IMG/VR virus record: IMGVR_UViG_3300021137_000001
Location: 124,001 to 188,000 of that record
Reading direction: 5' to 3' (one strand)
Length of the DNA: 64,000 nucleotides
The notes beneath the pieces are model-generated. The model was not told the origin of the DNA. It searched no databases and was given only the letters and a program-made list of their open reading frames with translations. The position numbers were made by a program, and so were the translations under genes. This document shows positions 8,253 through 34,308 of the stretch, piece after piece; position 1 is the first letter of the stretch, and each line of letters starts with the position of its first letter.

Positions 8253-9500
8253 CTAAGTAGTTAGTACTCGGTAAAGATCATCATAGGCTATGGCGTTATC
8301 GTTGTAGCCTATTTCCTCGAATAGCGTCTTACAATTATCAAGTAGTTCACGAGTAATGATATGCTTAAACTCACCGTAGAAGTGATGGAAATTGTACTCT
8401 ACGATTGGCGCTATAGCCTCCATAACGCTTCGCTTCTCTTCTGCACTTAACGCACAGTACCACGCAATCTGCGCAACAACAGCTTCTGTACGTGCATCGT
8501 TGTCTGTAATAGTATCATAGCTTTCATCTATAATACCTTCGAATGTTTTAAATCCATATGACTTCAAGTAAGCCAAGTTACCAACCGCCCCAAGTAACAT
8601 AAATGGTTGTTTCATTACAATTGGCTTAAATATTTTTTCAGTTAACTGTAGTTTGTCATAGTAGAATACAGTTTCTGTAACAACATGCCATAAGCTGTCA
8701 TTAGTACAACGTGGGATATCTGCACTAGCTGAACCTAACACACGTTCATTGTCTATAATCAATGGAGTGCTAGGTAAGTGTAATTTAATGTGGTCTACGG
8801 CTTTGCTTGACAACTTTGTATTAACATCAGCAATCTCTTCTTGCCAGCTTGCTTGTTCTGTAGCTAGCCCAAAGCTCACTTGTCCATGTTCTAATAATAA
8901 TTCTTCGGCTAATTTGCTCACAAAGTAGCAACGATAGCTACGATCATTTGACACAAGCCTATTGAATGTTATATAATCGTAAGTATAGTCCTTAATTACT
9001 TGTTTGTTATAGTTTAGTGCGTAAAACCCGCGATACCAATCAAGTGCGGCAAAACCGTGAAAGAAGTAATACAATAGTCGAGCATCATATTTTATAGCAC
9101 AAGAATCAACTAGTGCAGATTTCTCACTAGTAACAATAGTTTTCTTTTTATATACATATTGTGGATTAGCCAAATTTTCCATGTGTTCGTCCAACGATAT
9201 ACAACCAGTTAATCCATATGGAAGATTATTTTGTAACATAAGTTGATACATTTCATGCATATCTCTCCCATCAGAATATGTAAATAAATCCATATATTGT
9301 TCGACTATTTGCTGCAGGTGCGGTTCCTGATCATAAAAGAAGATTTTTTCTGTGGTGCGGAAACTTGGCGTAAATAATACTATATCATTGATAGTTACCT
9401 GATTAGTATTAATTACACCATTTTTACAATAATAGAAATCAAAGTTCTCAACAAAGATAGTAGAATATAAAAATTCGTAAACATGATCAATTTGGAGCAT
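8253..9500 (-). CDS. Putative glycosyltransferase-like protein, paralog of 15088-16080
   Basis: VVTET...LTEKIFKPI...PF...YLKSYGFKTF...IDESYD block resembles the C-terminus of GT-B/fucosyltransferase-like proteins. The ORF is solid; the function is tentative. Confidence 0.55.
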   Translation of the reverse strand: MLQIDHVYEFLYSTIFVENFDFYYCKNGVINTNQVTINDIVLFTPSFRTTEKIFFYDQEPHLQQIVEQYMDLFTYSDGRDMHEMYQLMLQNNLPYGLTGCISLDEHMENLANPQYVYKKKTIVTSEKSALVDSCAIKYDARLLYYFFHGFAALDWYRGFYALNYNKQVIKDYTYDYITFNRLVSNDRSYRCYFVSKLAEELLLEHGQVSFGLATEQASWQEEIADVNTKLSSKAVDHIKLHLPSTPLIIDNERVLGSASADIPRCTNDSLWHVVTETVFYYDKLQLTEKIFKPIVMKQPFMLLGAVGNLAYLKSYGFKTFEGIIDESYDTITDNDARTEAVVAQIAWYCALSAEEKRSVMEAIAPIVEYNFHHFYGEFKHIITRELLDNCKTLFEEIGYNDNAIAYDDLYRVLTT

Positions 9501-9503
9501 TAA

Positions 9504-9554
9504 ATGTCGTCTCAATTAAAAACAGTAGGTTTCATTGGTATTGGCAAATTATAG
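9504..9554 (+). pseudogene. Orphan 5' fragment of the nucleotide-sugar dehydrogenase (MSSQLKTVGFIGIGKL*)
   Basis: GGAG RBS; the peptide matches the N-terminus VGFVGLGKL of ORF 10198. Confidence 0.85.
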
Positions 9555-9583
9555 GTTTTGTTGGTATCGGTATAAATACTAAT

Positions 9584-10201
9584 ATGAACCAACCATACAC
9601 ATATTTAATCGGATGGAGTACCCAGCAAAAATATTATTACGGAGTACGCTATGCCATTGATTGTAATCCCACTGATCTTTGGGCAAAATACTTTACATCT
9701 TCGCCTACTGTTAAAGCAATGCGATTAATTTATGGTGAACCAGATGTGCGCCAAATTAGAAAAATATTTACTGACAAACAAGCTGCAAGATTATGGGAAA
9801 CAAAAGTATTACGCAGAATGAAAGTAATACGTAGAGAAGAATTTTTAAACAAGAATGATGCGCCGGCTCCTCCAATAAACAATAGAATTATGTCGGATTC
9901 AACTAAAGAAAAAATAAGTGCGTCTAATAAAAGTAAGCCTAAATCAGAAGAGCACAAACAAAAGATTAGAGAAGCAAGAGCAAAACAAATTAATACAAGA
10001 AAAGGGCAGACTCAAACTGAAGAAACAAAACAAAAGATTAGAGAAGCAAGAGCAAAACAAATTACGTCAGATGAAACAAAACAAAAAATGAGTATGCAAC
10101 AAAAATTAGCAGGTGGGTATGGTCCTAAAAAACACACCGAAGAAACAAAACAAAAAATTAGAAATACATTAATGGAAAAATTTAAAAAGGGTAGTATATG
10201 A
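9584..10201 (+). CDS. Free-standing homing endonuclease (GIY-YIG-like with NUMOD3 repeats)
   Basis: YTYLI...YYGVR; repeated (H/Q)TEETKQKI motifs; TATAAATA promoter at 9571-9578. Confidence 0.85.
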   Translation: MNQPYTYLIGWSTQQKYYYGVRYAIDCNPTDLWAKYFTSSPTVKAMRLIYGEPDVRQIRKIFTDKQAARLWETKVLRRMKVIRREEFLNKNDAPAPPINNRIMSDSTKEKISASNKSKPKSEEHKQKIREARAKQINTRKGQTQTEETKQKIREARAKQITSDETKQKMSMQQKLAGGYGPKKHTEETKQKIRNTLMEKFKKGSI

Positions 10202-11427
10202 ATAATGTAGGATTTGTAGGGTTAGGGAAATTAGGAATGGCATGTGCAGAAGTGATGGCACAAACATATGACGTCACTGGCTATGATATTTACCCACGTA
10301 CTGGTGATAAGATAGCAATATCTGATACATTAGAAGGAGCAGTAAAGGGCAAGGATGTTATCTTTGTTGCAGTACAAACACCGCATGATCCGATCTATGA
10401 TGGCTCGCAACCAATTACACATTTACCAAACAAAGACTTTGATTATACAATTATAAATCAAGTATTAGCAGACATTAATCAATACGTTACGCAAGATCAA
10501 CTTGTAGTATTAATCAGCACAGTACTACCAGGAACAACACGTAGAGAGCTACGTAAGCATATCACTAACGCACGTTTCATCTATAACCCATACTTAATTG
10601 CAATGGGTTCTGTAGCGTGGGATATGGTTAACCCAGACATGATTATTATCGGTACAGAAGATGGTAGCGTAACTGGTGATGCTAAGTTGCTTACAGACTT
10701 TTACGCACCACTAATGCAAAACAATCCACATATTGCAATTGGCACATGGGATGAAGCAGAAGCAATTAAAATCTTCTACAATACATTTATTAGTACTAAA
10801 GTTGGCTTAGTAAACATGATACAAGACGTTGCTATGAAGTCAGGCAACATTAATGTTGATGTTGTAACTGACGCATTATGCGCTTCTACTATGCGTATCA
10901 TTAGTACAAAGTATATGACAGCGGGTATGGGTGATGCAGGCCCGTGTCACCCACGTGATAACATTGCGCTACGTTGGTTAGCTGAGAATTTAGACTTGGG
11001 CTACGATATTTTTAATACAGTTATATATGCACGTGAGATACAAGCAAAGAATCTTGCTATATATCTTAGTGATTTACAAGAATTAACTGATTTGCCTATC
11101 GTTATACACGGAAAAGCGTACAAGCCAGATGTGGATCTATTAGATGGCAGTTATAGCCTCTTAATCGGCAGTTATCTGACTGAAATAGGAGCAAAATACA
11201 CTTATTCTGATCCTTTAACAGGTGACATTGTTGCTGATGACACAACTGCTATTGTACTACTTGCTCACAATAGAACTATTACCTACGGTTACACCGGCGA
11301 ACTGCCAGAACAACAATTGTATTACCGACTTGGATTAAGTAGTATTGTAGTTGACCCGTGGCGCAAGTTTAAAACAGACACAAAATCAATTAAGGTTCTG
11401 CATTATGGCAACACACGAATTAATTAA
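10198..11427 (+). CDS. UDP-glucose/GDP-mannose 6-dehydrogenase family
   Basis: GLGKLG Rossmann motif, AVQTP, STVLPG, KIFYN, catalytic GPCHPRD, KAYKP. Confidence 0.92.
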   Translation: MNNVGFVGLGKLGMACAEVMAQTYDVTGYDIYPRTGDKIAISDTLEGAVKGKDVIFVAVQTPHDPIYDGSQPITHLPNKDFDYTIINQVLADINQYVTQDQLVVLISTVLPGTTRRELRKHITNARFIYNPYLIAMGSVAWDMVNPDMIIIGTEDGSVTGDAKLLTDFYAPLMQNNPHIAIGTWDEAEAIKIFYNTFISTKVGLVNMIQDVAMKSGNINVDVVTDALCASTMRIISTKYMTAGMGDAGPCHPRDNIALRWLAENLDLGYDIFNTVIYAREIQAKNLAIYLSDLQELTDLPIVIHGKAYKPDVDLLDGSYSLLIGSYLTEIGAKYTYSDPLTGDIVADDTTAIVLLAHNRTITYGYTGELPEQQLYYRLGLSSIVVDPWRKFKTDTKSIKVLHYGNTRIN

Positions 11428-11932
11428 GATAGAACCAAATTGGGGCGAAGCGTATACTCGACTAGATTATGTCACAGAACCATTTAACAATTCCGATGAT
11501 ACTACACGTTGGCTAGCACAGGGATATAGTAATAAGTTTACTGGTGCTATGTGTGATATGCGTAAGTCACAACCAATTTGGAATAGTTATATACTAGCAC
11601 AGTTCGAACAACGTGGTTGGAAAGATGTTTGTACAAGTTATTATAGGATGGATACTGGTACTACGTTACCGGTACACTATGATATATATAAACGATATGT
11701 TGAATTGTTTAATTTACAAGGTAAAGAACAAACAATACACCGCGCAATTGTATTTTTAGAAGATTGGCAGAGCGGACATTACTTAGAAATAAACGGCGAA
11801 CCGATAGTTAAATGGTCAGCCGGTGACACAGTAATATGGCAATATGATGCACCACATATGGCGGCCAATATGGGTTTATTGCCACGATACACGCTTCAAA
11901 TAACAGGACACATGGATGAAATTAAGCAGTAG
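11405..11932 (+). CDS. 2OG-Fe(II)/cupin-fold oxygenase
   Basis: HYD (HxD), distal His in PHMAAN, and RYTLQITG. Confidence 0.75.
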   Translation: MATHELIKIEPNWGEAYTRLDYVTEPFNNSDDTTRWLAQGYSNKFTGAMCDMRKSQPIWNSYILAQFEQRGWKDVCTSYYRMDTGTTLPVHYDIYKRYVELFNLQGKEQTIHRAIVFLEDWQSGHYLEINGEPIVKWSAGDTVIWQYDAPHMAANMGLLPRYTLQITGHMDEIKQ

Positions 11933-25965: not shown

Positions 25966-27856
<1,891 letters not shown>

Positions 27857-32961: not shown

Positions 32962-34308
32962 ATGGGTGTACAAATGATAAACGCTATTTTAGAAGAAGTT
33001 GCAAACGAACCAAGTAAGAATGCAAAAATTGCTATCCTTACTCAGCATAAAGACAATAAAGTATTACAAGAAGTTGTTCGTTTAACCTACGACCCAACTG
33101 TAAACTTCTTCATTAAGAAAATTCCTACATACAAACAAATTGATACAACAGATATCAGTTTAACAGAAGCAATTAGTCAACTTGGTCAGTTAAGCAGCAG
33201 ACAAGTTACTGGTACTGCTGGTATTAATCATTTACAAAATATTCTAAGTAACTTACCTGAAGAAAAAGCAAAAGTAATTGCTAAAATTATTGACCGTGAC
33301 TTACGTGCGGGCTTCGGTGAGTCAACAGCAAACAAAGTATGGAAGAATTTAATTCCAGAGTTTCCATATATGCGTTGCGCACTTCCTAAAGCCGCTAAGT
33401 TAGATGAGTTTAGCTGGGTTGATGGTGTGTTTAGTCAGCTTAAAGCAGATGGTATGTTTGCCAACGTAAATCATACAGCAGATGGCGAAGTACAAATTTT
33501 AAGTCGCGCTGGTTCATTGTTTCCACAACAACACTTTGCACATTTAGTCACTGATGTACAAGCAACGTTCCCAACTAATACACAATCACATGGTGAATTG
33601 TTAATTAAACGTGATGGTGTTGTGCTTCCCAGACAGTTAGGTAACGGTATCTTAAACAAGGTACAAAAAGGTGGCGACATTGGACCAAATGACGAGATTG
33701 TTTACTTAGTTTGGGACCAAATTGCCTTAACTTCAGTCGTTTCTAAAGGTACTTACAATGTTCCGTATAAAGCTCGCTTTGCTGAATTAGCAACACAAAC
33801 ATTAACGGCAACTTGTATTACCCTAATCCCAACTGTTATTGTACATAACATGGAAGATGCACTTACACACTATCGTGAAATGCTTGCAGAAGGATTAGAA
33901 GGCACAATCATTAAAGATGCACAGGGTATTTGGAAAGATACAACAAGCAAACAACAAGTTAAAATGAAACTCGAAACAATCATTGATCTTATTATCACTG
34001 GGTTTAATGCAGGTAAAGGTAAAAATGAAGATACATTTGGTTCTATTGCTTGTCGATCAAGTGATGGCTTACTTGAAGTTAATGTAAGCGGCTTTACTGA
34101 TTCAGATAGAATCAGTATCTGGGCAAGCAAGGACGAAGTAATTGGCAAGATTATGGCAGTTAAATCTAACAGCATTATGCCACCGAGTGATAGTAATACA
34201 AGTTACTCATTATTTTTACCACGTTGCGAAGAAATTAGAGATGATAAACAAATAGCAGATGATTTACAACGTATCATCGATCAATTTGAAAGCGCAATTA
34301 AGGATTAA
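32962..34308 (+). CDS. ATP-dependent DNA ligase (T4 gp30-like)
   Basis: KADG, HGEL, VWD, EGTIIK, KMK and SLFLP motifs. Confidence 0.95.
   Translation: MGVQMINAILEEVANEPSKNAKIAILTQHKDNKVLQEVVRLTYDPTVNFFIKKIPTYKQIDTTDISLTEAISQLGQLSSRQVTGTAGINHLQNILSNLPEEKAKVIAKIIDRDLRAGFGESTANKVWKNLIPEFPYMRCALPKAAKLDEFSWVDGVFSQLKADGMFANVNHTADGEVQILSRAGSLFPQQHFAHLVTDVQATFPTNTQSHGELLIKRDGVVLPRQLGNGILNKVQKGGDIGPNDEIVYLVWDQIALTSVVSKGTYNVPYKARFAELATQTLTATCITLIPTVIVHNMEDALTHYREMLAEGLEGTIIKDAQGIWKDTTSKQQVKMKLETIIDLIITGFNAGKGKNEDTFGSIACRSSDGLLEVNVSGFTDSDRISIWASKDEVIGKIMAVKSNSIMPPSDSNTSYSLFLPRCEEIRDDKQIADDLQRIIDQFESAIKD

What the first reader, a model, noticed from the sequence alone, without database searches (positions are those of the whole stretch)
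9494..10240. Endonuclease insertion that appears to replace the N-terminus of its target gene
Seen: RBS + MSSQLKTVGFIGIGKL* (9504-9554) sits before the endonuclease. After the endonuclease, overlapping its stop (ATGA), the dehydrogenase restarts as MNNVGFVGLGKLG with different codons (GTAGGTTTCATTGGTATTGGCAAATTA versus GTAGGATTTGTAGGGTTAGGGAAATTA). Inference: the element invaded the conserved Rossmann GxGxxG codons and carries a recoded, cleavage-resistant 5' end, so the gene stays functional without splicing and is driven by the element's late promoter.
Basis: partly seen in the sequence, partly recalled or inferred. Interest (0 to 1): 0.68.

Follow-up and report, generated by a model that had tools for sequence, protein, structure and literature searches.

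The report
Endonuclease cassette replaces a gene's start
A selfish endonuclease gene in a 329-kb freshwater phage sits inside the first codons of a sugar-dehydrogenase gene, strands the old 16-codon start as a fossil, and supplies a new recoded start, which is the mirror image of a trick so far described for fungal mitochondria.

Summary

- **Native start.** Endonuclease-free close relatives, up to 93% identical in the dehydrogenase, read MSSQLKTVGF(I/V)GIGKLG without a break. Window 9504-9551 is therefore the stranded native 5' end.
- **The inserted gene.** 9584-10201 encodes an intact free-standing GIY-YIG + NUMOD3 homing endonuclease. Its fold matches the I-TevI catalytic domain and the catalytic residues are conserved.
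- **The new start.** The endonuclease stop overlaps (ATGA) a new start of the dehydrogenase. The first ~90 nt of that gene differ from the clade; the rest is native.
- **No intron.** No intron was detected.

- A third, untranslated copy of the Gly-motif codons (9554-9571) runs straight into a TATAAATA box 5 nt before the endonuclease ATG.
- That copy, the box, the ATGA overlap and the position in front of a dehydrogenase are conserved in five endonuclease lineages.
- A paralogous endonuclease does the same to a second dehydrogenase 20 kb away in this genome.

Endonuclease and host-gene similarities disagree, so the element moves horizontally. Cleavage resistance of the new 5' end, promoter use and any operator role of the third copy are inferred, not shown. 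I rate it a new variant of a known kind, of moderate to good interest.

The parts
8253..9500 (-). Upstream divergent gene (415 aa from ATG 9500, no family hit). Its start lies 3 nt from the native dehydrogenase start, so the remnant at 9504-9551 is also its upstream region.
   Evidence: The orthologue directly abuts the dehydrogenase start in endonuclease-free relatives.
9494..9497 (+). Native Shine-Dalgarno sequence (GGAG) of the dehydrogenase, still in place.
   Evidence: The upstream sequence is conserved in the relatives.
9504..9554 (+). Copy A: the stranded native 5' end of the dehydrogenase (9504-9551, MSSQLKTVGFIGIGKL), closed by TAG 9552-9554. The TA at 9552-9553 is extra relative to the uninterrupted allele.
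9554..9571 (+). Copy B: an untranslated third copy of the G-F-V-G-I-G codons, carried with the element in all five lineages. Read here as an older remnant; it may also serve as an operator or a recombination arm.
9571..9578 (+). TATAAATA, a T4-type late-promoter-like box 5 nt before the endonuclease ATG (leaderless-type spacing).
9584..10201 (+). Free-standing GIY-YIG + NUMOD3 homing endonuclease gene (205 aa). Its last codons contain the Shine-Dalgarno-like AAGGG (10187-10191) for the next gene.
10198..10286 (+). Copy C: the replacement 5' end of the dehydrogenase (new ATG overlapping the endonuclease stop, MNNVGFVGLGKLGMACAEVMAQTY...). The tract is rich in differences private to the window. 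Its 3' limit is approximate.
10198..11427 (+). Hybrid nucleotide-sugar dehydrogenase gene (409 aa; UDPG/GDP-mannose dehydrogenase family). It is native from about codon 30 onward.

Best explanation
Window 9552-10286 is a mobile cassette built around a free-standing GIY-YIG homing endonuclease. The cassette always sits directly ahead of a nucleotide-sugar dehydrogenase gene.

**Inferred mechanism**
1. The enzyme cuts endonuclease-free alleles inside the conserved Rossmann GxGxxG codons, about 30-50 nt into the gene.
2. The break is repaired from the endonuclease-bearing genome.
3. On the right, repair uses homology in the gene body. It therefore copies in the donor's ribosome-binding site, ATG and first 15-30 codons. 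These must be a non-cleavable version of the site.
4. On the left, donor and recipient share little or no homology when they belong to different lineages. The broken end is then joined illegitimately.
5. The recipient's own start (copy A) is left stranded upstream as a 16-codon mini-ORF.

**Copy B** is read as such a remnant from an earlier host. It now travels with the element, fused to its TATAAATA box.

**Expression.** The endonuclease is probably expressed from that box as a near-leaderless late transcript. The dehydrogenase is read from the same transcript by ATGA stop-start coupling.

**Shown:** the anatomy, the empty sites in close relatives, the recurrence of the arrangement, the integrity of the endonuclease, and its horizontal movement.

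**Inferred:** the cut site, the repair route, immunity of copy C, and promoter use.
For: 1. **Empty sites.** L005, L007, L010, L021 and others carry a contiguous MSSQLKTVGF(I/V)GIGKLG next to the same upstream gene, with no endonuclease. L021 is 93% identical in protein.
2. **Hybrid gene.** DNA identity to L021 is 88-97% over columns 60-240 of the alignment. Differences private to the window number 2, 6, 3 and 1 in the first four 30-nt bins, then 0, 0, 0.
3. **Recurrence.** Every endonuclease at least 60% identical falls into one of five lineages, across viral and metagenome contigs. Each has motif copy + GGTATAAATA + 3-5 nt + ATG, and an ATGA overlap onto M..(V/I)GF(V/I)G(I/L)GKLG.
4. **Lineage 2 repeats the whole pattern.**
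   - Its endonuclease-free relatives are 95-97% identical and start MKKIGFIGIGKLG.
   - L086 keeps MKKIGFIGIG-stop upstream.
   - L086 restarts as MTVEKKKIGFVGIGKLG. Over the first 60 columns this is closer to another clade (72%) than to its own (52-55%).
5. **Paralogous case in the same genome (L164).**
   - The layout is MKIGIIG-stop, fused to ATAAATA, then an endonuclease 55% identical to the window's, then a TAATG overlap onto MAIIGIIGFGYVGG.
   - The target is a second dehydrogenase only 24% identical to the first.
   - Its endonuclease-free relatives read MKIGIIGFGYVGG.
   - The closest relative contig lacks both endonucleases (L021 and L171 lie on one contig).
6. **Endonuclease intact.**
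   - Y7, Y18, G20, E72 and N89 are invariant and R22 is conserved in at least 90% of 50 homologues.
   - The model has pLDDT 85.
   - Residues 2-97 superpose on the I-TevI catalytic domain at Z 8.7, rmsd 2.7 A, 89 residues aligned.
   - NUMOD3 scores 45 bits.
7. **Horizontal movement.**
   - The dehydrogenase-linked endonucleases form one clade (SH-aLRT 97), and the window's is sister to lineage 2 (98).
   - Endonuclease and dehydrogenase identities disagree: window vs L086 71% / 58%; L086 vs L252 66% / 84%.
8. **Promoter.**
   - The genome encodes a gp55-like late sigma factor (E 7.9e-23).
   - 22 of 34 TATAAATA boxes lie in the ~11% of the genome that is non-coding.
   - 71 ATAAATA boxes precede ORFs.
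Against: - No cleavage, binding, transcript or protein data exist.
- No donor of the window's copy C was identified. Over 69 nt it is no closer to other clades than to its own, so fast local divergence after a duplication is not excluded for this one lineage.
- The Pfam GIY-YIG-type hit is below threshold (19.1 bits against a cut-off of 25).
- TATAAATA is not enriched within the window alone (8 found, 11.6 expected).
- The remnant end-points differ between lineages: after GKL, after GIG, after GF, after the first G. This fits resection plus illegitimate joining, but it also means the cut site is not pinned down.
Confidence: 0.8

Rival explanations
1. Endonuclease-bearing group I (or II) intron. 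Copy A would be exon 1, 9552 to about 10233 the intron, and splicing would restore MSSQLKTVGFIGIGKL|GMACAEV...
For: - A join at 9551/10234 would give a perfect native-like protein.
- Short, unannotated first exons next to endonuclease genes have been overlooked before, for example the ICP1 terminase (PMC10448857).
Against: - Both strands of 9000-11500 give no Rfam match at E <= 1.
- Only about 30 nt lie outside the ORF on either side, which leaves no room for a ribozyme core.
- Copy C has its own Shine-Dalgarno sequence and ATG, overlapped with the endonuclease stop, in all five lineages.
- Lineages 3 and 4 have no start-bearing remnant.
- The remnants end at different codons in different lineages.
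Confidence: 0.04
2. A local tandem duplication of the gene's first codons arose first, by slippage. The endonuclease later landed between the copies, and the copies then diverged. On this view no foreign 5' end was imported.
For: - Copies A and B are adjacent and 17 of 22 bases identical.
- The window's copy C has no clearly closer relative outside its clade.
Against: - The same layout recurs with independent native remnants in lineage 2 and at the second dehydrogenase.
- In L086 the new start carries a 4-codon extension typical of another clade.
- Copy B and its junction with TATAAATA are shared by all lineages, so they travel with the element.
Confidence: 0.08
3. Genes-in-pieces. The 16-residue peptide from copy A would be a functional subunit that assembles with the downstream protein, as in the split nrdA of phage Aeh1.
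For: - Copy A keeps its ribosome-binding site, ATG and reading frame, and is about 90% identical to relatives.
- Split genes created by endonuclease insertion are known (PMC2988022).
Against: - The downstream protein already has a complete GxGxxG N-terminus, so the peptide is redundant.
- Remnants in other lineages are truncated, frame-shifted or lack a start.
- Copy A may be preserved simply because it is the upstream region of the divergent gene that starts at 9500.
Confidence: 0.03
4. A dead relic. The endonuclease no longer cuts anything, and the layout is a frozen accident inherited vertically.
For: No activity data exist. Many phage endonuclease genes are defunct.
Against: - The ORFs are intact and the catalytic residues conserved across 50 homologues.
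- Presence and absence vary among relatives 93-97% identical in the host gene.
- Endonuclease and host-gene similarities are incongruent.
Confidence: 0.05

Closest known systems
Free-standing Seg-type GIY-YIG homing endonucleases of T4-like phages ('intronless homing': SegF, SegG, SegB and others)
   Same: - A GIY-YIG catalytic domain followed by NUMOD-type DNA-binding repeats.
- No intron or intein.
- Placed next to a conserved target gene.
- Patchy distribution among relatives.
- Flanking markers are co-converted.
- Late, weak expression signals (PMC2988022).
   Different: - The recipient's own gene start is left behind as a remnant.
- The element supplies the ribosome-binding site, ATG and first codons of the target gene.
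- The T4 review mentions no such duplication: the term 'duplicat' has 0 occurrences in it.
- The target is a short protein-family motif (GxGxxG) shared by paralogous genes.
Mobile endonuclease ORFs (mORFs) of fungal mitochondria that carry a foreign C-terminal gene end (Allomyces atp6; Glomus atp6, atp9, cox2, nad3)
   Same: - An endonuclease ORF sits inside a coding region.
- It brings a diverged copy of the displaced gene end.
- The native end is stranded as an unexpressed duplicate and matches close relatives.
- A hybrid gene results (PMC3630166).
   Different: - The geometry is the mirror image: the 5' end is replaced instead of the 3' end.
- The ORF is separate, coupled by an ATGA overlap, rather than fused in frame.
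- The setting is a phage, not an organelle.
- The element carries its own promoter-like box.
Genes-in-pieces made by endonuclease insertion (mobE in Aeh1 nrdA; mobA between T4 genes 39 and 60)
   Same: A free-standing endonuclease gene interrupts a conserved coding sequence at a functionally critical motif (PMC2988022).
   Different: In those cases both pieces are needed and reassemble. Here the downstream gene is complete and the upstream piece is redundant.
I-TevI autorepression: an operator that resembles the homing site and overlaps the late promoter of the endonuclease gene
   Same: A target-like sequence (copy B) runs directly into the TATAAATA box of the endonuclease gene. In I-TevI the operator and homing site share 15 of 20 bases (PMC2988022). 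Here copies B and A share 17 of 22.
   Different: Binding and repression are untested here. Copy B can be explained as a remnant alone.

Membership tests
GIY-YIG homing endonuclease | GIY-YIG catalytic fold | tested here: met
   Model residues 2-97 against the I-TevI catalytic domain 1mk0: Z 8.7, rmsd 2.7 A, 89 of 97 residues aligned. The next hits are other GIY-YIG domains.
GIY-YIG homing endonuclease | Catalytic residue set (Tyr of GIY, Tyr of YIG, Arg, Glu, Asn) | tested here: met
   Y7, Y18, G20, E72 and N89 are invariant and R22 is conserved in at least 90% of 50 homologues.
GIY-YIG homing endonuclease | Curated sequence model above its threshold | tested here: not met
   - Pfam SegE_GIY-YIG: 19.1 bits against a cut-off of 25.
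- NCBIfam: no hit.
- PDB sequence profile: nothing.
- PHROG 314 'homing endonuclease': E 2e-17.
GIY-YIG homing endonuclease | Site-specific cleavage of the endonuclease-free allele | not testable with these tools
   Needs protein and substrate.
Free-standing (Seg-like) endonuclease, intronless homing | Not embedded in an intron or intein | tested here: met
   No Rfam family at E <= 1. The gene has its own ATG and stop, with about 30 nt of flank on each side.
Free-standing (Seg-like) endonuclease, intronless homing | Presence/absence polymorphism among close relatives, with co-conversion of flanking sequence | tested here: met
   - Empty sites occur in relatives whose host gene is 93% identical (window lineage) or 95-97% identical (lineage 2).
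- Private differences cluster next to the insert.
Fungal mitochondrial mORF with terminal gene duplication | The endonuclease ORF brings a diverged copy of the displaced gene end, and the native end is stranded | tested here: met
   compared with PMC3630166.
Fungal mitochondrial mORF with terminal gene duplication | Replacement of the 3' (C-terminal) end, usually in phase with the host gene | tested here: not met
   Here the 5' end is replaced. The endonuclease is a separate ORF upstream of the restored gene.
Group I intron with endonuclease ORF | Ribozyme core detectable | tested here: not met
T4-type late promoter | TATAAATA box, a gp55-type sigma factor in the genome, and motif enrichment ahead of genes | tested here: met
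   - Box at 9571-9578.
- phrog_234 hit at E 7.9e-23.
- 22 of 34 boxes lie in about 11% non-coding DNA.
- 71 ATAAATA boxes lie less than 60 nt before ORFs.
- Transcription start not mapped.
I-TevI-type autorepression operator | The endonuclease binds a target-like site over its own promoter | not testable with these tools
   - Only the sequence layout is shown.
- Copy B is more conserved than synonymous sites of the endonuclease gene in 9 of 10 lineage pairs.
Nucleotide-sugar dehydrogenase (UDPG/GDP-mannose dehydrogenase family) | N-terminal NAD-binding and central domains above Pfam thresholds | tested here: met
   - 58.9 and 59 bits against cut-offs of 27 and 25.4.
- TIGR03026 scores 139 bits, below its cut-off of 189.8, and the C-terminal domain is weak. 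The substrate is therefore unknown.

The most novel reading that the evidence does not exclude
This endonuclease clade may use the codons of a protein-family motif (the Rossmann GxGxxG) as a portable homing site.
- That would let it hop between paralogous dehydrogenase genes and between phage lineages with no other homology. Each time it would repair the damage with a self-carried 'gene-start cassette': promoter, endonuclease, ribosome-binding site, ATG and recoded motif.
- The conserved untranslated motif copy fused to its TATAAATA box would be functional rather than junk. It could be an operator for autorepression in the manner of I-TevI, the left recombination arm, or both.
- The stranded remnants would then be dated, mappable fossils of individual break-repair events.
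Probability: 0.35. Interest if true: 0.75.

Novelty: new variant of a known kind. Interest (0 to 1): 0.58.

Why it matters
How homing endonucleases reach new sites and new hosts without killing the genes they invade is a long-standing question. The usual answers are introns, inteins or intergenic placement.

Here a free-standing phage endonuclease appears to use a fourth solution: it carries a replacement for the gene end it displaces. The searched literature describes this only for the 3' ends of fungal mitochondrial genes.

Two features make the case useful:
- **Target switching.** Two paralogous endonucleases sit at the same motif of two dehydrogenases that are only 24% identical. This is a concrete, testable case of switching targets through a conserved protein motif.
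- **Annotation.** The remnants look like spurious mini-ORFs, and the hybrid genes carry foreign 5' ends. Both matter for annotating phage genomes and for building gene trees.

Tried and rejected
- **Rfam** on 9000-11500, both strands, E <= 1: nothing. The intron reading was dropped.
- **PDB sequence-profile search:** only a chance hit. The fold search was needed instead.
- **Foldseek alone** gave weak E-values (0.17-0.4), though the top hits were all I-TevI. The VIA re-alignment gave Z 8.7.
- **Donor search for the window's copy C:** no allele is clearly closer than the window's own clade over 69 nt. L061 and L063 share the residues VGFVGLGKLGMACAEVM but lack an endonuclease.
- **Base positions separating resistant from sensitive alleles:** GGG glycine codons recur in the replacement copies, but some endonuclease-free alleles have them too (read from the listings). 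No recognition sequence could be derived.
- **TATAAATA enrichment within the window alone:** absent. It appears only genome-wide and by position.
- **The minus-strand sigma-70-like site at the A|B junction:** not conserved in other lineages (read by eye from the and 47 sequences). It is kept only as a side note.
- **Literature searches** found no phage case of 5'-end replacement. The library is incomplete, so this is not proof of absence.
Full report
**Setting**

The window is bases 124001-188000 of a single 329,321-bp virus contig with direct terminal repeats, from a freshwater metagenome (record Ga0214165_1000003). G+C is 37%. The phage encodes GroEL, a DNA ligase, tail fibres and a T4 gp55-like late sigma factor (phrog_234, E 7.9e-23).

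- GGAG lies at 9494-9497.
- ATG 9504 opens MSSQLKTVGFIGIGKL, closed by TAG 9552-9554.
- A 205-codon ORF runs 9584-10201.
- Its stop overlaps (ATGA, 10198-10201) the start of a 409-codon ORF beginning MNNVGFVGLGKLG.
- The downstream protein has the NAD-binding and central domains of the UDP-glucose/GDP-mannose dehydrogenase family. It lies below the curated NCBIfam cut-offs, so I call it a nucleotide-sugar dehydrogenase of unknown substrate.
- The middle ORF has a NUMOD3 motif above threshold and a sub-threshold SegE GIY-YIG match, plus PHROG 314 'homing endonuclease'.

**The decisive comparison**

Searching viral contigs with the dehydrogenase gave many relatives. In the window's own clade (75-93% protein identity: L005-L021) there is no endonuclease. 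The same divergent upstream gene abuts the dehydrogenase start. The gene opens with contiguous MSSQLKTVGF(I/V)GIGKLGLACAEVMAQSY. The mini-ORF at 9504-9551 is therefore the native 5' end, 43 of 48 bases identical to L021 or L010. The endonuclease-bearing allele is interrupted after the G-K-L codons, with two extra bases (TA).

Downstream, the window's gene is 88-97% identical in DNA to L021 over columns 60-240 of the alignment. Differences private to the window, measured against the five closest relatives, number 2, 6, 3 and 1 in the first four 30-nt bins and then 0, 0, 0. The gene is thus a hybrid: about 90 nt of new 5' end on a native body.

**A third copy, and a conserved cassette**

Between copy A and the endonuclease ATG lies a third copy of the motif codons (9554-9571, G-F-V-G-I-G). 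It has no start codon, and it runs straight into TATAAATA (9571-9578), which lies 5 nt before the ATG.

Searching with the endonuclease showed that every homologue at least 60% identical falls into one of five lineages. All share the same cassette:
- a motif copy;
- GGTATAAATA;
- 3-5 nt, then the endonuclease ATG;
- an ATGA overlap onto a dehydrogenase that restarts M..(V/I)GF(V/I)G(I/L)GKLG.

The last endonuclease codons always contain an AAGGA/AAGGG Shine-Dalgarno sequence for the dehydrogenase (read from the sequences). More distant homologues (40-63%) sit elsewhere, behind a TATAAATA + hairpin + AGGAG arrangement.

**Independent repeats of the pattern**

- *Lineage 2 (L086 and relatives).* Endonuclease-free relatives 95-97% identical start MKKIGFIGIGKLG. 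L086 keeps MKKIGFIGIG-stop upstream, with the native promoter-like TTGTATAAT and its Shine-Dalgarno sequence. It restarts as MTVEKKKIGFVGIGKLG. Over the first 60 alignment columns L086 is 72% and 68% identical to L323 and L318, which belong to another clade, but only 52-55% identical to its own clade. After that it tracks its own clade.
- *Same genome, 20 kb upstream (L164).* ATG-AAG-ATT-GGA-ATT-ATC-GGA is fused to TAAATAC. A paralogous endonuclease follows (251 aa, 55% identical). A TAATG overlap then leads onto a 263-aa dehydrogenase that restarts MAIIGIIGFGYVGG. That dehydrogenase is only 24% identical to the window's. Its endonuclease-free relatives read MKIGIIGFGYVGG (L167) and MKHIGIIGFGYVGG (L171). 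L171 and L021 lie on one 218,902-bp contig, so the closest relative lacks both endonucleases.

**The endonuclease looks active**

- In 50 homologues Y7, Y18, G20, E72 and N89 are invariant, and R22 is conserved in at least 90%.
- The AlphaFold model has mean pLDDT 85.
- Residues 2-97 align to the I-TevI catalytic domain at Z 8.7, rmsd 2.7 A, 89 residues. Other GIY-YIG domains follow.

**It moves horizontally**

- The dehydrogenase-linked endonucleases, including the paralogue, form one clade (SH-aLRT 97; quick tree).
- The window's endonuclease is sister to lineage 2 (98).
- Identities disagree between the endonuclease and its host gene. Window vs L086 is 71% for the endonuclease and 58% for the dehydrogenase. 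L086 vs L252 is 66% and 84%.

**Promoter**

- Genome-wide, 22 of 34 TATAAATA boxes lie in the roughly 11% non-coding DNA (by my crude ORF call). In addition, 71 ATAAATA boxes lie less than 60 nt before an ORF.
- They fall into two classes: about 18-24 nt before the ATG with an AGGAG, or 4-7 nt before the ATG with none.
- The endonuclease belongs to the second class, which has leaderless-type spacing.
- Of the 21 genes with ATAAATA 1-8 nt before the ATG, at least 8 are endonuclease-like.
- Together with the gp55 homologue this makes a T4-type late promoter credible. No transcript was mapped, and the box is not enriched in the window alone.

**Mechanism (inferred)**

1. In a donor, the endonuclease is an ordinary intergenic free-standing gene just ahead of its target.
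2. It cuts endonuclease-free alleles in the GxGxxG codons.
3. The right end of the break is repaired by homology in the gene body, which imports the donor's start and first codons. These must be uncuttable, because the element lives next to them.
4. The left end has little or no homology in a foreign lineage and is joined illegitimately. This strands the recipient's own start.
5. The remnants end at different points: after GKL in the window, after GIG in lineage 2, after GF in L096, and after the first Gly at the second dehydrogenase. That fits variable resection.
6. Copy B would be such a remnant from an earlier host, now part of the element.

Copy B is not translated: its frame varies and it carries indels in L245 and L247. 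Even so, it is more conserved between lineages (68-86%) than the synonymous third positions of the endonuclease gene (52-72%) in 9 of 10 pairs. This hints at a DNA-level role. One candidate is an I-TevI-like operator over the promoter. In T4 the operator and homing site share 15 of 20 bases (PMC2988022); here copies B and A share 17 of 22. Another candidate is a recombination arm. This part is speculative.

**Rivals**

- *Endonuclease-bearing intron.* Disfavoured, because Rfam finds nothing and there is no room for a ribozyme core. The restored gene also has its own start signals, and some lineages have no start-bearing remnant.
- *Genes-in-pieces.* Unnecessary, because the downstream protein has the whole motif.
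- *Purely local duplication.* Cannot explain the recurrence or the foreign 4-codon extension in L086. For the window alone it is not fully excluded, because no donor was found.
- *Assembly error.* Unlikely, because other samples give the same layout with 100% protein matches.

**Comparison with what is known**

By fold, domain order and behaviour this is a Seg-like free-standing GIY-YIG homing endonuclease. The new feature is that it replaces the 5' end of its target gene and leaves a stranded native remnant.

The closest described analogue is the mirror image in fungal mitochondria. There, mobile endonuclease ORFs carry a foreign C-terminal end of atp6, atp9, cox2 or nad3 and leave the native end downstream (PMC3630166; see also PMC6279837). 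The T4 mobile-element review describes split genes and embedded promoters but no such duplication. Five further searches found no phage example. Because the library is incomplete, novelty is stated cautiously as a new variant of a known kind.

**Limits**

The tree is a quick one. The ORF calls behind the promoter statistics are crude. The 3' limit of the replaced tract (about 10286) is approximate.

Noticed in passing
L164:2347-3934 (= G000 113,347-114,934, outside the window): A second instance in the same genome. The native remnant MKIGIIG-stop is fused to ATAAATA. A paralogous GIY-YIG/NUMOD3 endonuclease follows (251 aa), and then a 263-aa dehydrogenase restarting MAIIGIIGFGYVGG. The new start contains a tandem ATTATCGGA/ATTATCGGG.
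   Followed up: yes
whole genome G000; in the window e.g. 9571, 29751 (+), 18665 (-): A genome-wide nATAAATA motif sits ahead of genes in two spacings: about 18-24 nt with AGGAG, or 4-7 nt with no Shine-Dalgarno sequence. At least 8 of the 21 genes with the box 1-8 nt before the ATG are GIY-YIG, HNH or NUMOD3 endonuclease-like (L384-L389 plus the two studied). Leaderless-type late expression therefore looks like the house style of endonuclease cassettes in this phage.
   Followed up: partly
window 9548-9576, minus strand: The best sigma-70-like site in 9000-11600 (TTTATA-17-TATAAT, 10 of 12) points at the divergent gene that starts at 9500. Its -10 box is created by the extra TA at the A|B junction, and its -35 is the reverse of the TATAAA box. 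It is not conserved in other lineages, so it may be chance.
   Followed up: partly
window 9500 / 9504: The divergent upstream gene (ATG 9500, minus strand) and the native dehydrogenase start (ATG 9504) are 3 nt apart. Each gene's expression signals therefore lie inside the other's coding sequence. This may explain why remnant A is so well preserved (about 90% identical to relatives).
   Followed up: no
L260, L262, L265, L268, L271, L272, L279, L284, L285, L293, L294 (upstream of the endonuclease ATG): More distant homologues (40-63%) are not next to dehydrogenases. Many of them share a different leader: TATAAATA (or ATAAATA), a G+C-rich hairpin, then AGGAG and the ATG. This recalls the hairpins that gate translation of T4 endonucleases.
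   Followed up: no
L318, L323, L327, L329, L337, L348 versus L305-L315: Endonuclease-free dehydrogenase alleles of one clade differ in N-terminal length (MKKIGF against M..EKKKIGF and others). The longer form equals the replacement start carried by lineage-2 elements. These alleles could be donors, or footprints of past invasion followed by loss of the endonuclease.
   Followed up: no
window 26246-27856; 32962-34308; G000 306113-306412: The phage encodes a GroEL-type chaperonin (E 5e-169), an ATP-dependent DNA ligase and a gp55-like late sigma factor, in a 329-kb genome with terminal repeats.
   Followed up: no
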